Positions 9,267 to 21,330 of a DNA stretch of 22,525 nt are shown piece by piece. Under the pieces are notes generated by a model. It ran no database searches, was not told where the DNA came from, and saw only the letters and a list, made by a program, of their open reading frames with translations. The stretch comes from Zygophlyctis sp. KS116. Its lineage: Eukaryota > Fungi > Chytridiomycota. The translations under genes and the position numbers were made by a program. Every line of letters starts with the position of its first letter. The stretch's first letter is position 1. The stretch spans positions 1-22,525 of the forward strand of contig BAAFSQ010000163.1 in NCBI GenBank assembly GCA_054661495.1, written 5' to 3'.

Positions 9267-9839
9267 TTATAATTTTGCAATTTTTAGACTTTTAGAAATT
9301 TGTAAAATACCAGAGAGAGCATATACTAGACTTGCAAGATGAAAAGATAATCCTAAATCCTTGAATAAAATTGGAAAATATTGTATGCAAAAAGTAATTA
9401 GTACTGTTGAAGGAATTGGAGTCCCTTCAAAAAACAATACTTTTCCATCGACACTAGTTTCATTTAGAGTAGAATTATATCTAGCCAATCTTAACACTCC
9501 ACAATTCACAAAAAACACTAGAAATATCATGTCCAGCAGAGAGTCTAGTCCATGTGAAAATCCCCAAACAGCTGGAGCAACCCCAAAAGCAATCAAGTCT
9601 GCCAAAGAGTCCAAGTCCTGTCCAATCACTGATCTAGAAAACAAACGAGCGATTTTTCCATCGAAAATATCAAAAAATAAAGAAAAAAACATTAAAACTA
9701 TTGAAATTTGAGAATAATATTCATCTTTTGAATTGCTGTAAAGGATGGAATTTAAAATAGATAATAGTCCACAGGATGAGTTACCCAGGGTTACAATATC
9801 TGCCAGAGATAGCATTTTAACAAGAGAAAATCTTGTCAT
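9267..9839 (-). CDS. CHO1: CDP-diacylglycerol--serine O-phosphatidyltransferase (phosphatidylserine synthase)
   Basis: CDP-alcohol phosphotransferase motif DIFDGKIAR...GQDLDSLADLIAFGVAP, plus RLARYN, FEGTPIP and ISKSLKI. Confidence 0.93.
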   Translation of the reverse strand: MTRFSLVKMLSLADIVTLGNSSCGLLSILNSILYSNSKDEYYSQISIVLMFFSLFFDIFDGKIARLFSRSVIGQDLDSLADLIAFGVAPAVWGFSHGLDSLLDMIFLVFFVNCGVLRLARYNSTLNETSVDGKVLFFEGTPIPSTVLITFCIQYFPILFKDLGLSFHLASLVYALSGILQISKSLKIAKL

Positions 9840-10061: not shown

Positions 10062-10682
10062 ATGTTATCAGTTGACAGGAATTGGGATTTTTCTCTGGAA
10101 GATAGAATATTGCTGGTTGGAGAGGGGGATTTTTCTTTTGCATGCTGGCTTTGTGAATATTTGACGGATGGATCAAACATTACGGCAACTGCTTTTGACT
10201 CTGTGGAAACTGCAGAGATCAAGTATCCAAATTTACAAGAGAAATTAGAAATTTTACAAGACTATGAAGCAAAGGTGTATTTCAATATTGATGCAACAAA
10301 TTTAAAGAATAAGAAAATCAAGGTTTATGACAAAATTATATTTAATTTTCCTCATGCTGGAAGAGGGATTAAAGATCAAGATCGAAATATTTTATGTAAT
10401 CAAGAACTGCTTCTTGGGTTTTTGTCTCAAGCAGAAAGTTATTTGGCAGAATTTGGTAGGATTTACGTGACTCTAAAATTGGGGATTCCATATGATCTTT
10501 GGGATTTAAAAAAGATATCGGTTAAATGTGGGTATGCAACCTTGAAATCTTTTGTTTTTAATCCAAAAGATTATCCAGGTTATGCACATAGAAGGACAAT
10601 AGGTTTTAAAGAAGGAGTCTCAAAAGATGATTCTCAAGAATGCAAAAATTGTAGAACTTGGTGTTTTATAAAAAAGTCATAG
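10062..10682 (+). CDS. BMT5: 25S rRNA uridine-N3 methyltransferase BMT5-like (DUF2431)
   Basis: ILLVGEGDFSF, IDAT, IIFNFPHAG, DQDRNI..NQ.LL and YPGYAHRRT. Start placed at ATG 10062, uncertain. Confidence 0.88.
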   Translation: MLSVDRNWDFSLEDRILLVGEGDFSFACWLCEYLTDGSNITATAFDSVETAEIKYPNLQEKLEILQDYEAKVYFNIDATNLKNKKIKVYDKIIFNFPHAGRGIKDQDRNILCNQELLLGFLSQAESYLAEFGRIYVTLKLGIPYDLWDLKKISVKCGYATLKSFVFNPKDYPGYAHRRTIGFKEGVSKDDSQECKNCRTWCFIKKS

Positions 10683-13197
10683 AATTTTTACACTTTCAAG
10701 ATGATCGATTTCAATTGGTTCGGGATCAATGAAATTCTCTTCGCCTCGCATTAGTTTTTCTACATATTGTTGTCGACTTATTGAGACTTTGACTTGCCGA
10801 GGCATGGAAGGATTAAGAAATACAACCAAGAGTAATACGAGTAATACAGAGTGTTCAAAGATGAGAATGAAAACAAGCCGTCCAATCCATTTTTGATCAG
10901 GTTCAAATGATGATAGATATGCCTCCTCAAAATATGTAGAAGTAAACGCAATTATAGACGCATTCATGGCTACTCCTATAAATGATAATCCAGTGATCCA
11001 TCTTTCCCAAATACCTATATTTCTCGCTATATTTTAGTACAATATTCTTACCTTGGTGGGAAAACGGCCTTTTATATCTAGTCACGATATTGATAGTATC
11101 AATCTTTCTTTGAAGAATATTGTGGACTAAGGCGAGGAGTGGAGCTACAGGAAATGCCACAGAGAAAAGTACTATAAAACCAAACTGTACAGTGGCAGCT
11201 AAATATCCATCCATCTCGACATTCTTTAGTTCTACATTCGTAAGGTAAGCGTCGCATAGCAATTGGGGATATTTCTTATTCTGGGTTATTTCATAATGAC
11301 GTTGTCTGATTGTCCAAAAGTTTTTAAGATAGAAAATAAGACTATTTTCCATGTAGGCATCATACAATTTTTTTAGCAGGGGCTCTAATACATTTAGAAC
11401 ATGTGCTACCACTGATCTCGTTAAAAATATGACTGTCTGTATTTTAGAGATTATAGCATACCATTTGAATTGTTAACTCCATCATGCAGTTCCGATTGAT
11501 GCATTCTGACTTCAAGGAGTTACTACCGTATAAAGGCATATCAGTTCTTTGAATCCAAATATTCACAACAGCCACATATATTATGATACCATAGTAATTT
11601 ACAAAATGAAAAACCAAATGCTTAAAAATGAGCAGATTCATATTGCGAAAAGTTTTTATGATTCTCAAAATCGGTGAGCTTTTTAGATATGTACATTCCA
11701 ATTGGCTGCAAGACTGCGATAGTTATAAAATATAGCGAGGCGGATATAGTTGTAGAATACGTTGTTATTTCCGGATAATAAGACCTTAAAGCACTATGAT
11801 ACCAAACATAAAGAGCAATATTTGAAACAGCCATTAAAAACTACTTCATAAAACGTTAAAAATACCAAAATAAGGATCGACCATCCAGAAACGAAATAAA
11901 GCCAAATTCTAGTTTCAAATGGCTCAAATGGCTCTAGCTTTCCAGTAATTTGATTTCGCCTCGTATACTTGGGACTCCAGAGTGGCCTTTGAGTTTCCTT
12001 ATGAACCAGTGTAGCAGTACTCCACTGTGAAGATAGAGTCGCTTGCCGCCTTGCCCAAAATTGAATATAAAGTACTCCCCAACAAGAGATAAACCACGCA
12101 TACGGTAAAGTTAAAGGATTGTCGAAAACATTTGCATAAATTTGATCTGATGTGGAATTGTAGCGAAGTTTCCAATTTGAATCAAAAAATGAATGAAAAA
12201 CACCATAAACAAATACAAAAGATCCAACCATGCCTGCTACAAATAACCAAAAAGAATAATGTCCCATCCATGCATATTGAAATGCAATTCTTTCCCCAAA
12301 ATATAATCGTACTCTATGAATGGGCTGGCATTTAATCCACCCCCTCCAAATCTGATATAAAATCGCTCTTTGATTAGGAGCGCTACCAACCTCATACGCA
12401 CTACCATCATGAAGAGCAAATGCACAAATATATACCCCATCTTCAAGCAGGATTTCTATATCTTTTTTAGATCCTTTGCGATTTGCAATCTTTACTCTAC
12501 TAACAACTCCATGAGTTACTAGATTTCGCTGAGAATTTGTAAATAAATTTAGTCTTGACTTCATCCCATTTTCTATCTCCTCTTGACTTAAAAAATGATT
12601 AATATTATCCATTGAGAATTTCGCACTTATATTTTCTATTTCTGCGTCTTGATCATTCAAGTACCATCTATTGAAAAACAGCTCCAAAAATGAATACGGT
12701 GTTTCTTTTTCAATTTGCGATAATAATTTCTTCAATGATATAAACTGCAAAGACTATATAATGAGCTATACAAAGTACCTTTAATGGGATCCTAATAGAT
12801 AGCCGTTCAGCCTCGCATGCCAACTTTTGAAAAGGACAATAAACCTTTACATATGAATTTACAGAGTCCCTATCTAATTCCCTTTCTAAAACCAGTCCTT
12901 CCTTTAATAAAGCGTATTCAAACTGTTTTCGGACACCATCACTGCAATCCGTTCTATTGTACATTAACACATAGTCCCAATGAGTCTGTTCTTTTAAATA
13001 TACAACTGTTATTAGTTTTTATGATTTGTACTTGATACTAGAGCATCGCCTAAAGGGAAACTAGAATACCTGTCCAAAGCTTCATTCATTGTGAGATGAT
13101 TCTTGTTGCTTCTAATTGAATTGTACAATTCGACATCTTCAAAACTACAAAATAAAATCTCTCGATCTTGTATTGTTTTGATATAGATTTTGGTCAT
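10677..13197 (-). CDS. Anoctamin/TMEM16 paralog A, with a frameshift near 11630
   Basis: Introns 13006-13031, 12754-12778, 11841-11865, 11437-11461 and 11027-11051. Motifs QPIHRVRLYFGERIAF, LTDFENH, QFGFIVLFSVAFPVAP, RPF..ARNIGIW and FILIFEH. Spliced length 2395 nt is not a multiple of 3. Confidence 0.88.
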
Positions 13198-13224
13198 AGT
13201 AAAATGAAAGATTGTCGGAATTTC

Positions 13225-13272
13225 AAGCGCAATCTTATCTATTAAGCGCAACTAAAGCGCAATTTTAAGCGT
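13225..13272. promoter_or_regulatory. Cluster of AAGCGCAA motifs between the two anoctamins
   Basis: AAGCGCAA at 13225, 13244 and 13255, and AAGCGT at 13267, within a 75-nt intergenic gap. Regulatory role inferred from position only. Confidence 0.45.
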
Positions 13273-16020
13273 TCAAACGGGACTGTTTAATTCAATGTCC
13301 GGATATCTTGGATCATAATCTGGATTGAATGGGGGAGGATTTGGTTCATCCATGGGTAAATCATACATGTCTTCATCAGTCTCCCCATTCAAAATCTTTT
13401 CCAGATAATAATGCCGTTCTATAGCATTTGCAACTTTTTCTGGTACTTTTGGTAAAAATAAATTGAAAATATAAACAGTCAGTAGAACTGCATTCTGGAA
13501 ACAAAGAATGAATCCTAATCTAGCACCCCATTTTCCAAGATCTGAAGTGAAATATCCTATATATTGAGTTTCAAAATAAGGAGAAGAAAATGCTATTATT
13601 GTTGGATTTATGATTGCAGCTAATTTAGAAAAAATTGAAATCCATGTTTCCCATGCTCCTATATCATTATCTTGAAGAGCAAAAGGTCTTTTATATCTTT
13701 GCAAAAGATGATTAGAGTCTTTAAGTTAAGAAATAAAAAATACCAATCCTTTTCTGAATAATATTGTGTAATGCTGCAAAAAAGGGCGCAACAGGAAAGC
13801 TTACAGAGAAAAATACGACAAATCCAAATTGAATTACTGCAGTATTATATCCATCCAAAGAAATATGCATATGATCGATGCTATAAAGTTATCAAAAGAT
13901 TATTACTTTGCCAAGACAGAATCTTCAAAGAATTGTGGCACCCGAGAAGATGATAATGAAGCACCTTCCTCTGAACTTAGAATTTTTGATTTTAGAATTC
14001 TGGATTTTCCCAAATCTTTAATTTTCTTTCTTGACTTCTTTCCTCTAGCTGCTAATTTGATTGCATTCTCTACAAGCGGGAACATGAAATTAATAAAATG
14101 TGTCAGAAATGATTTGCCGAGGAAAATGACTCCCTTTATCTTAGATGGTGATTTTTACCATTTGAATTGTTAGCTCCAAAAGGCAATTATTGTATATGCA
14201 TTTTTCATTCAGTTCAATGCTAGAGAAAGAACCTAATTGACCTTCTTGGACCCATTTCTTTACCAGAGCAATGTAGAATAGTGTACCGTAAAAATTTATG
14301 AAATCAAACAGCATAAATTTTGAAATGATGGAGTCTTTTGCATTAAGTTAAATTAATCATTTACCTTGATGACTGGTTGCCTTTTTATGGTTTTCTTTTT
14401 CAGTTAATCTTTCATAAATCTTTTTAATGCTTACTTTTTAGATATGTATCTTGAAAAATAACTTAAAATCAGCGATGCAAATAGAGAGATAGCGGCACTT
14501 GTAAGAGGAGCGTAGTACTTGATTTCAGGGTAGTTATTTTCAAGAAAAGATGCAAGAACAGCATTGTAAACGACGTATGATTCTACAACCACCAGCATTA
14601 TGACACACATAATAGATATTAGCGTCCATGAGATTATCTTAACTTTTGTTTGCTCCGCATAAGAGATATATGGTTCCAGTTTCCCTGTAACCGTGCTTAG
14701 TCCCAATTGATTATGCTTCCATCCTGGTCTAAGTGGCTCTTCATAGCTAAAATTGATCATATTCCATTTAACCATCAAAAATTGATTACGTCTTTTCCAC
14801 CATTGAACATAAATGATAGCTAATTAGTTAATTAAAGGTTAAATTACACCAAACAGACATAAAGAAAGCAAAAGGAACCGTAAGAGCCTATTTTATCAAA
14901 TCAATTCAAGATTTACATTATCAAAAGCTTTACTGATTCTCATAACAGACTCTTCATTATATTTGATTGAGCTTCAATTAAGAAAAATATTCTTTACCTG
15001 ATTTTTACAGATGAGAATGATATGTAAATTCCATAAATTGTTACGGCTAAACCCACAAATCCAGCTAGAAATAGCCAAAATGTATAATGCTCTAGCCATG
15101 CAAAGTAAAAAGCAATTTTTTCCCCATAGTAGTCTCTAATCATTTGAATCGGTTGAGGAGTTAGCATGGACCTCCATTTTGTCATTAGATCAGATCTAAG
15201 GTTGTCAACAGAATTAAATCCTTTTGATCCATCATGCGGAGTATAAAAACTGAAATAGACATTAAGGTTTATAAGATGAAATAAATCTTTTGGTTCTCCC
15301 TTTGCATTCCGGAATCGCACTCGAGTCACAATATTATACACCATCAAGTTTCTAGTGGCGGATGAGAATAGTTTTAAAATGGCGTGTATCTTTTCGTCCG
15401 ATCCTTCATCAATAAACCAATCCAACTTGGATTTTCTAAATTGCGCATGTAACTGGGTCATTTCCGCATTATCATTAGTCTCCCAATAGTCATACTTGAA
15501 TTTGACCTTTTTTTCATCTTGTTCAATTGCTCTCCTGATGTGATCAAGAGATTTTGACTTTAAAATAAATTCCCGATTTCATACCTTTAGCGGCAACTGC
15601 ATTTTAAATCGTTCAGCTGCAGTGAGCATTCTATCAAAAGGGCAAAGTATCTTTAAAAAGGCATCAGACTTTCCTAAATCTTAAGCTCCATTTTATCTCA
15701 CCATCAGGCGCAGCTTCCCTTTCTAGGACCAATCCTTCCTGAAGCAAACAATACTCAAATACATTTCGAGATCTTTTGTGCTTATTATTTGCAGTATCGT
15801 ATCTTAGAATAGCGTCCCATTTAACCTTTTCTTTTTGATAAATCAGCTTTACATAAGCGTCCCCCATCGCATCTCCAGCATATGCTTCTAAAGCATCCAT
15901 CATGTTATCATACTTTGTTTCTAATATCATATCATACAGATCAGTGTCTTTAGTATCTAAAAACAATAGCTCTTTTAACCCATTCTTTCGGACGATAATC
16001 TTTGGACCATTTTGCGCCAT
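13273..16020 (-). CDS. Anoctamin/TMEM16 paralog B (825 aa)
   Basis: Ten introns: 15674-15701, 15558-15584, 14972-14997, 14888-14916, 14820-14847, 14409-14434, 14335-14364, 14134-14158, 13881-13906 and 13719-13743. Motifs QPIQMIRDYYGEKIAFYFAWL, ENHK, QFGFVVFFSVSFPVAP and RP....DIGAW. Spliced length 2478 nt. Confidence 0.92.
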
Positions 16021-17896: not shown

Positions 17897-20800
17897 TTAG
17901 TCATCATCACTTTCTATTATAGACTTTGTCTTTTTCTTAGTTTCTTCGTCATTCTCAACTACTTTAATAGATTCAGTAGATTCCATAGGCTCTACATTGT
18001 CATCAGACTCATCATCACTTTCAATAATGGCTTTACTGAGAGTTGATGATTTACCCTTTACAGATTCTACAGATTCAAGGGTGTCATTAGTAAGTTCTTC
18101 TTCAACCTTGTTGATTTCTTCCTTTACAGGTTTAGTCTTTTTTCTTTTTTTAACAACAGGTCCAGAGGATTCATCTGATGATTCCTGTTTGATTTTTTTA
18201 GTAGTCTTTCGTTCACTATAATTCTTCATTTTTTCATTTTCTAAAGCCATTAAAGCTTTAAGTTCTAGTCTTTTTCTTTCGATTTCTTCCTGTTCAAGTC
18301 TTTCATTTTCTTGCTGACGGGCCTTTTATCTAAATATTTAAAAAATTACAATTTTTTCTAGTTTTTCTGCCTCGGCACGATCCCTTTCCGATTTCATTTC
18401 TTCCAGTCTTTCATTTTTGATTCGATCTAGTGTTTCAGTCTCATGAATTTTTTTTTGGAGAATTCTTAGTACTACAGATACAAATTCTGCTCGCTTTTTT
18501 GCATGTTCGGCTATGAAACCAGAGGATTTATCAGTGGTAGATTGAGAGAGTTGAGTAAATATTCTATGATTAGTTACATTAAATTTACTCCATTGTAGCT
18601 TCTACTCGAGGAATAGCGCTTTTCATTGCAGCCAATGAACGCTTTTCCAGAGGCTGGTCAGTCAAAAGTAATCCATATTGCTGTTCAAGAAGGGCCCAAT
18701 TGAATTGAGTCGCCAAATCATCAGGGAAAAGTTCTTTGGCTTTTGTTAAATGTTTTTGTGCTGATTTCAGGATATCCACATTTTTGCCTTGTTTTGCTAC
18801 ACTGTAAAGAGCTTTTGCAAGAGCATTGTAAACAAAGGGATCATTTTGATGACTATTTTTCTTCAAAATACTTTCAAACTAGCTATGAGCATTCTTTTCT
18901 ATTACCAATGTTGCTGCTTGATGAAACTGCCCAAGATCCATCAGAATAAATGCCAGATTGATGGTGATCTGATAAAGTGGGGCCACTTCTTGAACCTAAT
19001 TAATTTACTTAAGTTGATATTACCTGGGTATAAATATCACGTGCCATTGGAAGCTCTTTCATTTCTGCCATTACAGATCCAATCCCAGCTGCTGCGTACA
19101 GGTTAAACGGCTTAATTTTTATGGCACGATCAAAAAATTCAAACGATTTGTTCAAATGATCCTGTCTTTGTTTGTTATATGCATCTTTTTCTTCTTTCTT
19201 GTTCATATCTTTTGGAGGTGCTAAATAATAATGCATTTTCAGGTATAAGTTTCCATACATTGTCAATGCGTAAGGATCATGCTTATCAATTTTTGTTAAA
19301 ATATGATCAAGCACTCGCTTGACCCTTGTCCAGTCTTTGTTTTGAAAATAACACAAGCCAAGTATATGCCAAGCCTGGAGATTTTCTTTATCATATTCAG
19401 TAATTTCCTTAAGCATTCCGATAGCTTCGCTTGTTTTTTTCTCCTTATATCGCATTGAGGCGAGTCGGAGCAGTGCTAAGATTAGACAGTTTGCTTAATT
19501 ACAATCCAAATACGAAGGGTGTGCTTCAATCAGCTCGAGATACATTGATTCCGCCTTTTCAGAATCCCCCAACATTTCATATAAAGTTGCAATGTTGAAC
19601 TTTATTGTAACTTTGCTAGCTTCGGAAGTATTGGAATTTTGCATATCAGTCATTTTTAAGGCTTCAGCGTAAAGCATTTTAATTTTTTCGACTCCTTCTG
19701 AATCAACAGATTCCATCTGAATTTGATTCATAACTGCGACATTATTTAAAAGTTCCGCTGGTATCTTGTAATTTTCAGTATTTTGAAGAATTTGCAAAGC
19801 GTGCTCGCAATCTAAAATTTAGAATTCTTCATTTACATTTCATCGCCTGCTGAATATCTGTATCTTCTAAAAGTGCGGCCCATTCAATTAAAACTTCAAA
19901 GTCGAACAAATATTCGCTTTCAGTCAGTTCGATTCCGGGTCCAACTTCATCCGATCGATAAGTCTTCATCAAATTCTTCATTTTTTCATAGAATGAAAAT
20001 GCTTTGGGTCGTGTATCTAGAGACTTTGAATATACAGTGGCCAATTTCTAATAATTTAAATCGCAAAGCAAATACCTTTATTGTTTCATAATTTTCAGGA
20101 TCTTTGGCAATGACCTTTTCAAAATGTAAAATTGACTTTTCCATTTCACCTTTATAAATATATAATTGTCCAAGCCCATAATTTAGCATAATGGAGTCAT
20201 TTCCTGAAATACTTTCAAAAATTTCCAAAGCAGCGTTATAATTCCCCTAATTTTATTTATAAAATTTAAAATACCTGAGCTTGAAAAATCAACCCCTTCA
20301 TGTATTTACAATCCACAACCAGTAAAGGAACATGCGAGTTTTTTAAAGAGGTTTCTACCAAGACTAAGGCCTATAATTATTATTATTATTTGTCGGCGTA
20401 CTTTTTGATATTGTCCCTTCTCAAAAAATCTTCGAGCCATTTCTAAAGCAACTGTAGAATTTTTTGGATTTAATTTAAAAGCTACTTGTAGACTCTGATT
20501 GGAGCTTGATCTAAATTTTGTAATTTCTTCCTTTGATAATCCCGAATCTTTAGAAGCATTCATATCCATAATTGAAGATAATGCCAAAGCATCAACATTT
20601 TCAGAATCTTTTTCTAAAGTCCTTTTAATAGCAGCTCTTGCTTCTTTCATCATTCCTAAATGATGAAAACAAATCGCAATATAAACACGAATATTTGGAA
20701 TATCTGAATCAATTCTAAAAATTGTTTGATAAACCTTTAAAGTTTCTTTAATATCTCCTTTTTGATTAAAAACCACAGCTTGACCAAATAATGCAGGAAT

Positions 20801-21330
20801 ATAGTATGGATCTGCATTAATAGCATAATTTAAGAAATATTCTGCTCCTTTAAAATCATTTCTTTCGATTAAAACATTTGCTCTTGAAGCAAGAGTCATA
20901 ACATCATATTGATCCAATTGAGTAGCAGCATCCAGTAATTGTGTAGCTTCAGTAAGTAGTTCCTCCCTGTTTCTAGGAGAATCTTGATCTTTATAAGTAA
21001 AGCTCTGCCCTTCACCTAAACCTCGAGCTAATTCGAGCAGATATGTAGCTAGAGAGTTTAGAATGAGTAATTTAAACTTTTCCTGATTTGTAGCCTGATC
21101 AAATACATTTTTTCCTGCTCTTAAAAATTTCTCAAATTCCATATTCATCCCTTTTTTCCTATATTCCATCTATTGTTAAATTTGAGAATTACAGCAAATT
21201 GGACAAAATATTTCAGTGGGACTTTTTCTTCCAAGAGAATATTTAATATGGTTTCATCATACCCTTCGAGATCATTCAAATCAATCTCTACAACCTCTTC
21301 ATTTCCCACGGGAATTTCAATCGACGGCAT
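17897..21330 (-). CDS. CTR9: PAF1 complex TPR subunit Ctr9 (1063 aa)
   Basis: N-terminal SIEIP...VEIDL..L...ILLEEK, TPR array, DKHDPYAL, PFNLYAAAGIG, and charged tail ending KSIIESDDD. Nine introns: 21170-21192, 20371-20401, 20247-20274, 20048-20075, 19812-19836, 19476-19502, 18996-19023, 18564-18588 and 18323-18349. Spliced length 3192 nt. Confidence 0.92.

What the first reader, a model, noticed from the sequence alone, without database searches (positions are those of the whole stretch)
10677..16020. Tandem anoctamins that have both lost the Ca2+-binding site and share histidines there
Known: TMEM16 channels and scramblases bind Ca2+ through TM6 NN..E, TM7 EY.E and TM8 E...D (mouse TMEM16A N650/N651/E654, E702/E705, E734/D738). 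Seen, by manual alignment: TM6 is RSVVAHVLN (A) and KSFLTHFIN (B); TM7 is DGYLAATVQFG (A) and DGYNTAVIQFG (B); TM8 is ALVHNILQRKID (A) and AALHNIIQKRID (B). Four of five acidic ligands are neutral, only the TM8 Asp remains, and both paralogs keep His in TM6 and TM8 plus an Asp one residue before the TM7 site. The paralogs are otherwise very divergent, so the shared changes look selected. They also share an extra ~50 aa N-terminal segment (KI.....E.LF....D..LY..I...M..AL..Y....GDA.V). Inference: a Ca2+-independent subfamily that may be constitutive or gated by pH, a transition metal, voltage or force, and may form heterodimers.
Basis: partly seen in the sequence, partly recalled or inferred. 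Interest (0 to 1): 0.82.

Follow-up and report, generated by a model that had tools for sequence, protein, structure and literature searches.

The report
Fungal anoctamins without calcium-binding sites
Two neighbouring genes of an uncultured freshwater fungus encode TMEM16/anoctamin membrane proteins from a conserved chytrid-type subfamily that has replaced almost every calcium-binding residue, two of them with conserved histidines, so they most likely work without direct calcium gating, as yeast Ist2 does.

Summary
Window 10677-16020 (minus strand) holds two tandem anoctamin genes with 25-30 nt introns: A has 6 exons and 798 aa, B has 11 exons and 825 aa.

**Calcium site.** HMMER alignments to mouse TMEM16A/F and a 57-sequence alignment agree. 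Of the five acidic ligands only the TM8 Asp (D738 equivalent) remains. N651 and N730 are both His.

**New points**
- A third paralog on another contig has the same site.
- The signature defines a monophyletic clade (SH-aLRT 100). It includes proteins of Spizellomyces, Gaertneriomyces, Rhizophlyctis and Borealophlyctis, plus many freshwater metagenome fragments.
- The three proteins of this genome also lack the TM2 Glu and TM10 Asp of the third Ca2+ site.
- Both genes are under purifying selection (pN/pS about 0.1 between strains).
- Gene A has a 2-base frame break in the window. Two independent metagenome assemblies do not have it.
- The shared N-terminal segment occurs in all fungal relatives, including those with an intact site.

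**Reading.** Loss of direct Ca2+ gating is well supported by sequence. The activity itself (constitutive scramblase, or pH/metal gated) is inferred. Yeast Ist2 is a known precedent, so I rate this a new variant of a known kind.

The parts
10677..13197 (-). Gene A, anoctamin paralog. Exons: 13197-13032, 13005-12779, 12753-11866, 11840-11462, 11436-11052, 11026-10677 (stop TGA at 10679-10677). 798 aa when read with the 2-base allele seen in other strains.
   Evidence: Pfam hits on exon pieces. Five introns of 25-26 nt located. Translation. pN/pS 0.13 against the strain in run X3.
11629..11630 (-). Frame break in gene A. The window lacks 2 bases here (minus strand reads ...GCT C|A TTT TTA AG...) and runs into TAA.
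   Evidence: The window's spliced CDS is 2395 nt, which is 1 mod 3. Contigs of runs X3 (depth 229) and X4 carry + strand GA behind 11629, which restores ...QYESALIFKHLVF....
11053..11436 (-). Exon 5 of gene A. It encodes TM6, TM7 and TM8 in one piece. Site codons: A565 at 11406-11404, H566 at 11403-11401, N569 at 11394-11392, G631 at 11208-11206, A634 at 11199-11197, H659 at 11124-11122, Q663 at 11112-11110, D667 at 11100-11098.
   Evidence: phmmer alignment to mouse TMEM16A. Multiple alignment. Codon coordinates.
13273..16020 (-). Gene B, anoctamin paralog, 825 aa, intact. Exons: 16020-15702, 15673-15585, 15557-14998, 14971-14917, 14887-14848, 14819-14435, 14408-14365, 14334-14159, 14133-13907, 13880-13744, 13718-13273 (stop TGA).
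   Evidence: Ten introns of 25-30 nt give one open frame of 2478 nt. Pfam hits. pN/pS 0.08. An indel polymorphism lies inside the last intron at 13734/13735.
13717..14103 (-). Site codons of gene B: T567 at 14103-14101, H568 at 14100-14098, N571 at 14091-14089, G642 at 13852-13850, T645 at 13843-13841, H670 at 13768-13766, Q674 at 13756-13754, D678 split across 13744 and 13718-13717.
13032..13197 (-). N-terminal segment of A (first exon). The matching segment of B lies in 16020-15850. The pattern is ...I/V..R.IL....D...F..I......AL..F...GDALVK..Y....HWD.VL.
   Evidence: It aligns in all fungal relatives, including Mortierella and chytrid proteins with an intact site. It is absent from the animal and choanoflagellate sequences shown.
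12061..12063 (-). Gene A codon Q362 at the TM2 Glu of the third Ca2+ site (E425 equivalent). Gene A S756 (10808-10806) sits at the TM10 Asp (D884 equivalent). In gene B these are Q360 (14805-14803) and K768 (13449-13447).
   Evidence: Alignment columns LEFWKR and PD. Coordinates. Site definition from PMC7786149.

Best explanation
A and B are functional tandem paralogs of a fungal, ANO7-like TMEM16 subfamily whose orthosteric Ca2+ site between helices 6, 7 and 8 has been dismantled.

Shown:
- Four of the five acidic ligands are neutral.
- The two Asn ligands N651 and N730 are conserved His.
- The TM7 Glu is a conserved Gly.
- Only the TM8 Asp remains.
- In this genome the TM2/TM10 third Ca2+ site has also lost its acids.

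Inferred:
- The proteins are not gated by direct Ca2+ binding.
- A polar network of His, His, Asn/Gln and Asp holds helix 6 against helices 7-8, the job that the two Ca2+ ions do in canonical members.
- The protein would then act as a Ca2+-independent, probably constitutive, lipid scramblase with some ion leak. This is analogous to yeast Ist2, where a lysine takes the place of Ca2+.
- The histidines leave room for modulation by pH or a transition metal.
For: Family and fold:
- Pfam Anoctamin plus Anoct_dimer matches.
- An AlphaFold model of paralog C's TM3-TM10 exon has pLDDT 86.6. Its best Foldseek matches are TMEM16F, TMEM16A and TMEM16K.

Site loss:
- HMMER alignments to mouse TMEM16A/F and the multiple alignment.

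Conservation:
- The signature appears in 17 library representatives and 10 full-length proteins.
- These form one clade with SH-aLRT 100.
- Named members come from four chytrid genera.

Selection:
- 14 synonymous and 7 nonsynonymous differences in A, 10 and 3 in B, against the strain of run X3. That gives pN/pS of 0.13 and 0.08. None touches a site residue.

Third site:
- Lost only in A, B and C.

Hinge:
- The Gly at the TM6 hinge position is Thr in A and Ala in C but kept in B (hinge role from PMC7118279).

Precedent:
- Ist2 lacks the site and is a constitutively active scramblase (PMC12618243).
Against: - No functional or expression data exist. No RNA run holds the locus.
- In TMEM16A, simply neutralising site acids mostly lowers Ca2+ sensitivity rather than opening the channel (my own knowledge), so a constitutive state is not guaranteed.
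- Up to three acids could still sit near the site: the TM8 Asp, the Asp one before the TM7 position, and a Glu just before the TM6 Pro in A and C.
- B keeps the hinge Gly.
- Gene A is broken in the window sequence itself.
Confidence: 0.6

Rival explanations
1. The histidine pair, the TM8 Asp and the Asn/Gln form a new ligand site for protons or a transition metal such as Zn2+. The protein would then be gated, not constitutive, with Ca2+ sensing swapped for pH or metal sensing.
For: The His at the N651 and N730 positions are nearly invariant in the clade (one Gln and one Gly exception), while the E705 position drifts. In TMEM16A both positions contact the bound Ca2+ (PMC7118279). A site of two His plus a carboxylate is a common Zn2+ ligand set (my own knowledge).
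Against: Some clade members carry Arg at the E734 position or Lys at the E654 position (Gaertneriomyces, Spizellomyces, P0027). That points to a tethered positive charge rather than a bound cation. No geometry could be measured.
Confidence: 0.17
2. Ca2+ control is retained indirectly or through other residues. One route is a low-affinity site built from the remaining Asp/Glu residues. Another is a Ca2+-binding partner acting on the cytosolic domains.
For: A and C carry a Glu one helical turn below the E654 position. All three carry an Asp one before the TM7 site. Chytrid members of the clade still have the third-site Glu and Asp.
Against: B lacks the TM6 Glu. A, B and C lack the third-site acids. 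At most three carboxylates replace five.
Confidence: 0.13
3. The site is decaying because the genes are losing function: relaxed constraint in a reduced genome, with gene A already a pseudogene.
For: The window's copy of A has a 2-base frame break. The E705 position is variable. The terminal branches of A, B and C (0.73-0.88) are somewhat longer than the median of 0.61.
Against: pN/pS is about 0.1 in both genes. All 15 introns keep the frame. The break is absent from two other assemblies, one of them at depth 229. The signature is conserved across chytrid orders.
Confidence: 0.05

Closest known systems
Yeast Ist2 (TMEM16 homolog, constitutively active ER scramblase; PMC12618243)
   Same: A TMEM16 fold with the conserved Ca2+ site lost by substitution. 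It is the documented case of Ca2+-independent scrambling in the family.
   Different: - Ist2 keeps the helix-6 Glu and the helix-8 Asp and bridges them with a Lys at the E506/E705 position. A and B have Ala/Thr there, no helix-6 Glu, and two His instead.
- Ist2 resembles the TMEM16H/K-like fungal group and has a long disordered tethering tail. A and B carry the Anoct_dimer domain, sit nearest ANO4/5/7-like proteins, and have short C-termini.
Animal ANO4/5/6/7-type anoctamins (TMEM16F structures 6QP6, 8SUR and others)
   Same: Best structural and sequence matches. Same N-terminal Anoct_dimer domain and ten-helix domain.
   Different: The animal proteins keep N-N-E on TM6, E-x-x-E on TM7 and N-x-x-x-E-x-x-x-D on TM8, plus the third site. 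They lack the fungal N-terminal segment.
Other chytrid and Mortierella ANO7-like proteins (Polychytrium, Cladochytrium, Batrachochytrium, Blyttiomyces, Clydaea, Siphonaria)
   Same: Sister group in the tree. They share the N-terminal segment and the overall architecture.
   Different: Most keep Asn, Glu and Asp on TM8, and some keep the TM6 Glu. They lose mainly the E705 ligand, and a Lys follows that position.
nhTMEM16 and afTMEM16 (fungal Ca2+-activated scramblases)
   Same: Fungal TMEM16 scramblases with the same fold.
   Different: They are a distant branch with weaker matches and no Anoct_dimer-type hits here. Their Ca2+ site is complete and they are activated by Ca2+.

Membership tests
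TMEM16 / anoctamin family | Anoctamin transmembrane domain (PF04547) above the curated cut-off | tested here: met
   The exon pieces of A and B score 31-96 bits against a cut-off of 28, except the last exon of A at 21.9. The six-frame genome search gives 151 and 87 bits.
TMEM16 / anoctamin family | N-terminal cytosolic Anoct_dimer domain (PF16178), as in animal ANO1-7 | tested here: met
   55 and 37 bits in A, 37 bits in B, against a cut-off of 22.
TMEM16 / anoctamin family | Ten-helix TMEM16 fold | tested here: met
   Tested on paralog C's single exon covering TM3-TM10. pLDDT 86.6, pTM 0.81. The best Foldseek matches are TMEM16F/A/K with probability 1.00. A and B are 38-40% identical to C. 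The joined A and B proteins were not folded.
Ca2+-activated TMEM16 channels and scramblases | Five acidic ligands on helices 6-8 (E654, E702, E705, E734, D738 of mouse TMEM16A) plus N650, N651 and N730 | tested here: not met
   Only the D738 equivalent remains. N651 and N730 are His.
Ca2+-activated TMEM16 channels and scramblases | Third Ca2+ site: TM2 Glu (E425) and TM10 Asp (D884) | tested here: not met
   Q/Q/K and S/K/H in A/B/C. Both residues are near-invariant in the other sequences of the 57-sequence alignment.
Ca2+-activated TMEM16 channels and scramblases | Activity requires cytosolic Ca2+ | not testable with these tools
   Needs a reconstitution or patch-clamp assay.
Ist2-type constitutive scramblase | Lys at the E506/E705 position, salt-bridged to a retained helix-6 Glu and the helix-8 Asp | tested here: not met
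   Ala (A), Thr (B) and Ser (C) at that position. The helix-6 Glu is replaced by Asn (Ist2 description).
Ist2-type constitutive scramblase | Long disordered C-terminal tether with a basic plasma-membrane-binding end | tested here: not met
   By my count from the translations, only about 50 (A) and 65 (B) residues follow TM10, with no basic cluster at the end.
His-Gly-His-Gln/Arg-Asp subfamily of fungal ANO7-like proteins (defined here) | H at N651, G at E702, H at N730, Q or R at E734, D at D738, and placement inside the clade | tested here: met
   A, B and C carry all five and fall inside the clade with SH-aLRT 100.

The most novel reading that the evidence does not exclude
The conserved His-His-Asp(-Asn/Gln) cluster is a new ligand site. 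It would convert a TMEM16 scramblase or channel from a Ca2+ sensor into a pH or Zn2+/transition-metal sensor in zoosporic fungi. In this freshwater lineage all three anoctamins would have been fully uncoupled from Ca2+.
Probability: 0.15. Interest if true: 0.8.

Novelty: new variant of a known kind. Interest (0 to 1): 0.55.

Why it matters
Direct Ca2+ binding between helices 6-8 is the defining control of TMEM16 proteins, and within the family those residues are described as strongly conserved (PMC5868767, PMC12618243).

Ist2 showed that one branch escaped this control through a tethered lysine. The clade found here is a second, independent escape:
- It lies in the branch closest to animal ANO4-7.
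- It uses a different solution, a conserved histidine pair and in some members an Arg or Lys.
- In one lineage the third Ca2+ site is lost as well.

This gives natural sequences for asking what the Ca2+ ions do mechanically in gating, and whether a histidine pair can replace them.

The clade has members in cultured chytrids. One is Spizellomyces punctatus, which to my knowledge can be transformed, so the question is testable at the bench.

Tried and rejected
- **Organism guesses.** I considered a ciliate, a dicyemid or an orthonectid because of the 25-nt introns and the 12.7 Mb assembly. I rejected these. There are no in-frame TAA/TAG codons apart from the frame break. The anoctamins fall among chytrid proteins. 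The neighbouring BMT5-like gene has its best named hits in chytrids and Mucoromycota at 50% identity or less.
- **Programmed +1 frameshift at TTT-TAA in gene A.** Rejected, because other strains simply have two more bases there.
- **First regular-expression survey of the site motifs.** It failed and I replaced it with pairwise alignment.
- **HMMER pairwise alignment of TM6.** It is gapped and unreliable. I relied on the equal spacing between ELTxQ and the Pro, and on the multiple alignment.
- **Model coordinates.** They are not released to scripts, so I did not measure the site geometry.
- **Literature.** Searches for TMEM16 or anoctamin together with chytrid terms found nothing.
- **Earlier scan notes.** Word searches found nothing on anoctamins or on the organism.
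- **RNA.** No RNA run holds the locus, so expression and splicing are not confirmed.
- **Joined proteins.** The spliced A and B proteins were built only inside scripts, for local alignment and the tree. They were not sent to any search, fold or complex tool; those tools received single exons by reference. Folding of whole A or B and a heterodimer test were therefore left out.
Full report
**What is there**

The region lies in AT-rich DNA (about 32-35% G+C). Its minus strand carries a chain of short open frames that all match Pfam Anoctamin (PF04547) or its N-terminal Anoct_dimer domain (PF16178).

The frames join through GT..AG introns of 25-30 nt.

- Gene A runs from the ATG at 13197 to the TGA at 10679-10677, with 6 exons.
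- Gene B runs from the ATG at 16020 to the TGA at 13275-13273, with 11 exons and one clean frame of 825 codons.
- The two genes are head to tail, with 75 bases between B's stop codon and A's start codon.

**A break in gene A**

As written in the window, A's spliced frame is one base too long and hits TAA after ...QYESAHF.

I laid contigs from four other freshwater metagenome runs on the region. Two independent runs (X3 at depth 229, and X4) carry two more bases behind 11629. With those bases the frame reads ...QYESALIFKHLVFHFVNYY..., which is the family's conserved motif, and A becomes 798 aa.

The break is therefore either an assembly error or a private lesion of the assembled strain. It is not a feature of the gene.

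The same comparison gave 40 substitutions against the X3 strain.
- A has 14 synonymous and 7 nonsynonymous differences. B has 10 and 3.
- This gives pN/pS of about 0.13 and 0.08.
- None of the changes falls on a site residue.
- An indel polymorphism lies inside B's last intron.

Both genes are under purifying selection.

**The calcium site**

Exon 5 of A encodes TM6-TM8 in one piece, so splicing cannot affect the reading.

phmmer aligns TM7-TM8 of A and B to mouse TMEM16A without gaps:
- The E-Y-M-E of TM7 is G-Y-L-A in A and G-Y-N-T in B.
- The N-N-I-I-E-I-R-L-D of TM8 is H-N-I-L-Q-R-K-I-D in A and H-N-I-I-Q-K-R-I-D in B. B's Asp lies across its last intron, so it is seen only in the spliced alignment.

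For TM6, the stretch from ELTxQ to the conserved Pro has the same length as in TMEM16F (sequences). The 57-sequence L-INS-i alignment gives N650->A/T, N651->H and E654->N.

Four of the five acidic ligands are therefore neutral, only the TM8 Asp is kept, and the polar ligands N651 and N730 are both His. Their role in TMEM16A is described in PMC7118279.

The Asp one residue before the TM7 site is not informative, because canonical anoctamins often have Asp or Glu there.

1. The genome is a 12.7 Mb assembly in 1175 contigs. It holds only one more anoctamin locus, on contig C57.
   - This paralog C has the same site: R-H..N on TM6, G-Y-E-S on TM7 and H-N-I-I-Q-W-R-I-D on TM8.
   - No canonical anoctamin was found in the assembly, though it may be incomplete.
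2. An exhaustive phmmer search with A's exon 5 found 1123 relatives.
   - Among the best 150, 17 carry the signature: His and Asn/His/Lys on TM6, G-Y on TM7 (Ala for Gly in P0027), and H-N..Q/R...D on TM8.
   - Most of the others have the canonical N-N-E-D pattern.
3. The named members are chytrid proteins: Borealophlyctis nickersoniae, Rhizophlyctis rosea (two), Gaertneriomyces (two) and Spizellomyces (two). The rest are freshwater metagenome fragments at 46-76% identity.
4. In a maximum-likelihood tree the signature carriers form one clade with SH-aLRT 100.
   - A, B and C form a subclade, with A and C closest to each other.
   - The sister group is made of other chytrid ANO7-like proteins.
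   - The site was therefore lost once, before these chytrid orders diverged, and has been kept since.
5. Within the clade the two His, the Gly and the Asp are nearly invariant.
   - The E734 position is Gln or Arg.
   - The E654 position is Asn, His or Lys.
   - The E705 position drifts.
6. The TM2 Glu and TM10 Asp of the third Ca2+ site are near-invariant across the alignment, including the chytrid clade members (site defined in PMC7786149). In A/B/C they are Q/Q/K and S/K/H.
7. The Gly at the TM6 hinge position is Thr in A and Ala in C, but is kept in B.

**The N-terminal segment**

The ~50 aa block that A and B share is real. It aligns in all fungal relatives, including those with an intact site, such as Mortierella P0090 and the environmental P0158/P0159. 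It is missing from the animal and choanoflagellate proteins shown.

It marks the fungal branch, not the loss of the Ca2+ site.

**Organism**

The locus is found in freshwater, lake, river and estuary metagenomes from 15 studies.

- The neighbouring BMT5-like methyltransferase has its best named hits in chytrids (Gorgonomyces, Zopfochytrium, Dinochytrium, Polychytrium) and in Mucoromycota, at 50% identity or less. Unnamed environmental relatives reach 56-98%.
- A TTC21/IFT139-like frame suggests the organism has a flagellum.

The best description is an uncultured freshwater zoosporic fungus with no close sequenced relative.

**How it most likely works**

The fold is that of a TMEM16. A model of paralog C's TM3-TM10 exon has pLDDT 86.6, and its best matches are TMEM16F, TMEM16A and TMEM16K.

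Shown by sequence: the orthosteric Ca2+ site is gone, and in this genome the third site is gone too.

Inferred:
- The proteins are not gated by direct Ca2+ binding.
- The conserved His-His-Asp network, with Asn and Gln, links helix 6 to helices 7-8 in place of the ions.

The precedent is Ist2. It lacks three of the acids, uses a Lys to bridge the helix-6 Glu and the helix-8 Asp, and scrambles lipids constitutively (PMC12618243). The Arg or Lys found at site positions in Gaertneriomyces, Spizellomyces and P0027 fits the same idea of a built-in charge.

I rank a constitutive or otherwise Ca2+-independent scramblase as most likely. A pH- or metal-gated site built on the histidines comes second. 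Residual or indirect Ca2+ control and loss of function are less likely.

None of this has been tested functionally, and I could not obtain model coordinates to measure the site.

**Comparison and novelty**

These are true TMEM16 family members, closest to animal ANO4/5/6/7. They fail the defining test of the Ca2+-activated class.

They are not Ist2-type either. They have no Lys at the E705 position, no helix-6 Glu and no long tether, and they sit on a different branch.

Surveys of the family describe the site as conserved within anoctamins (PMC5868767; bioRxiv 2022.04.22.489151). Full-text searches pairing TMEM16 or anoctamin with chytrid terms found nothing.

I rate it a new variant of a known kind.

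**Method note**

The spliced proteins were joined only inside scripts that read the window, for the local alignment, the tree and the SNP classification. In those scripts A was read with the two bases seen in runs X3 and X4.

All database searches and the fold used single exons by reference.

Noticed in passing
window 10677-10682: The stop codon of gene A (minus strand, 10679-10677) and the stop codon of the convergent BMT5-like methyltransferase frame (plus strand, TAG at 10680-10682) sit directly next to each other. There is no spacer between the two coding regions, so the genome is very compact.
   Followed up: partly
window 9267-9839 (minus strand): A 190-aa frame matches CDP-alcohol phosphatidyltransferase (PF01066), a phospholipid synthase of the phosphatidylserine/phosphatidylinositol synthase type. 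It lies about 0.8 kb from the anoctamin pair. The proximity may be chance.
   Followed up: no
window 20306-21169 (minus strand): A TPR frame gives sub-threshold matches to the TTC21/IFT139 N-terminal repeats (PF25062 34 bits against a cut-off of 40; PF25060 21 against 27). These belong to an intraflagellar transport protein, which hints that the organism builds a flagellum.
   Followed up: no
G000:C57:19098-20655 (locus L001; exons 159-1126, 1156-1477, 1504-2598): This is the third anoctamin paralog, C (794 aa). It has the same degenerate site and is closer to A than the tandem neighbour B is.
   Followed up: yes
window 13719-13743 and 13201: Strain differences in length fall outside coding sequence. 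One base is inserted inside B's last 25-nt intron (at 13734/13735) in three runs. One base is missing at 13201, just upstream of A's start codon, in run X3.
   Followed up: partly
P0063, P0089, P0095, P0157, P0164 (chytrid sister clade): Other chytrid ANO7-like proteins mostly keep the TM8 ligands. They have lost the E705 ligand (Ala, Thr or Ser), and a Lys follows directly. This recalls the lysine that replaces Ca2+ in Ist2.
   Followed up: no
P0093 / P0313 (Saprolegnia parasitica and S. diclina, about 1900 aa): An oomycete anoctamin-domain protein also has a histidine-rich degenerate site (TM7 D-Y-F-H, TM8 H-N..A...H). It appears to be an independent case.
   Followed up: no
P0096, P0106, P0116, P0127, P0131 (unnamed fragments): A further group of relatives has D-D-Y-M on TM7 and N-N..Q...D on TM8, so E705 and E734 are both neutral. 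Their origin is unknown.
   Followed up: no
window 13032-13197 and 15850-16020: The N-terminal ~50 aa block conserved in all fungal ANO7-like proteins has no Pfam match and is absent from animal anoctamins. Its function is unknown.
   Followed up: partly
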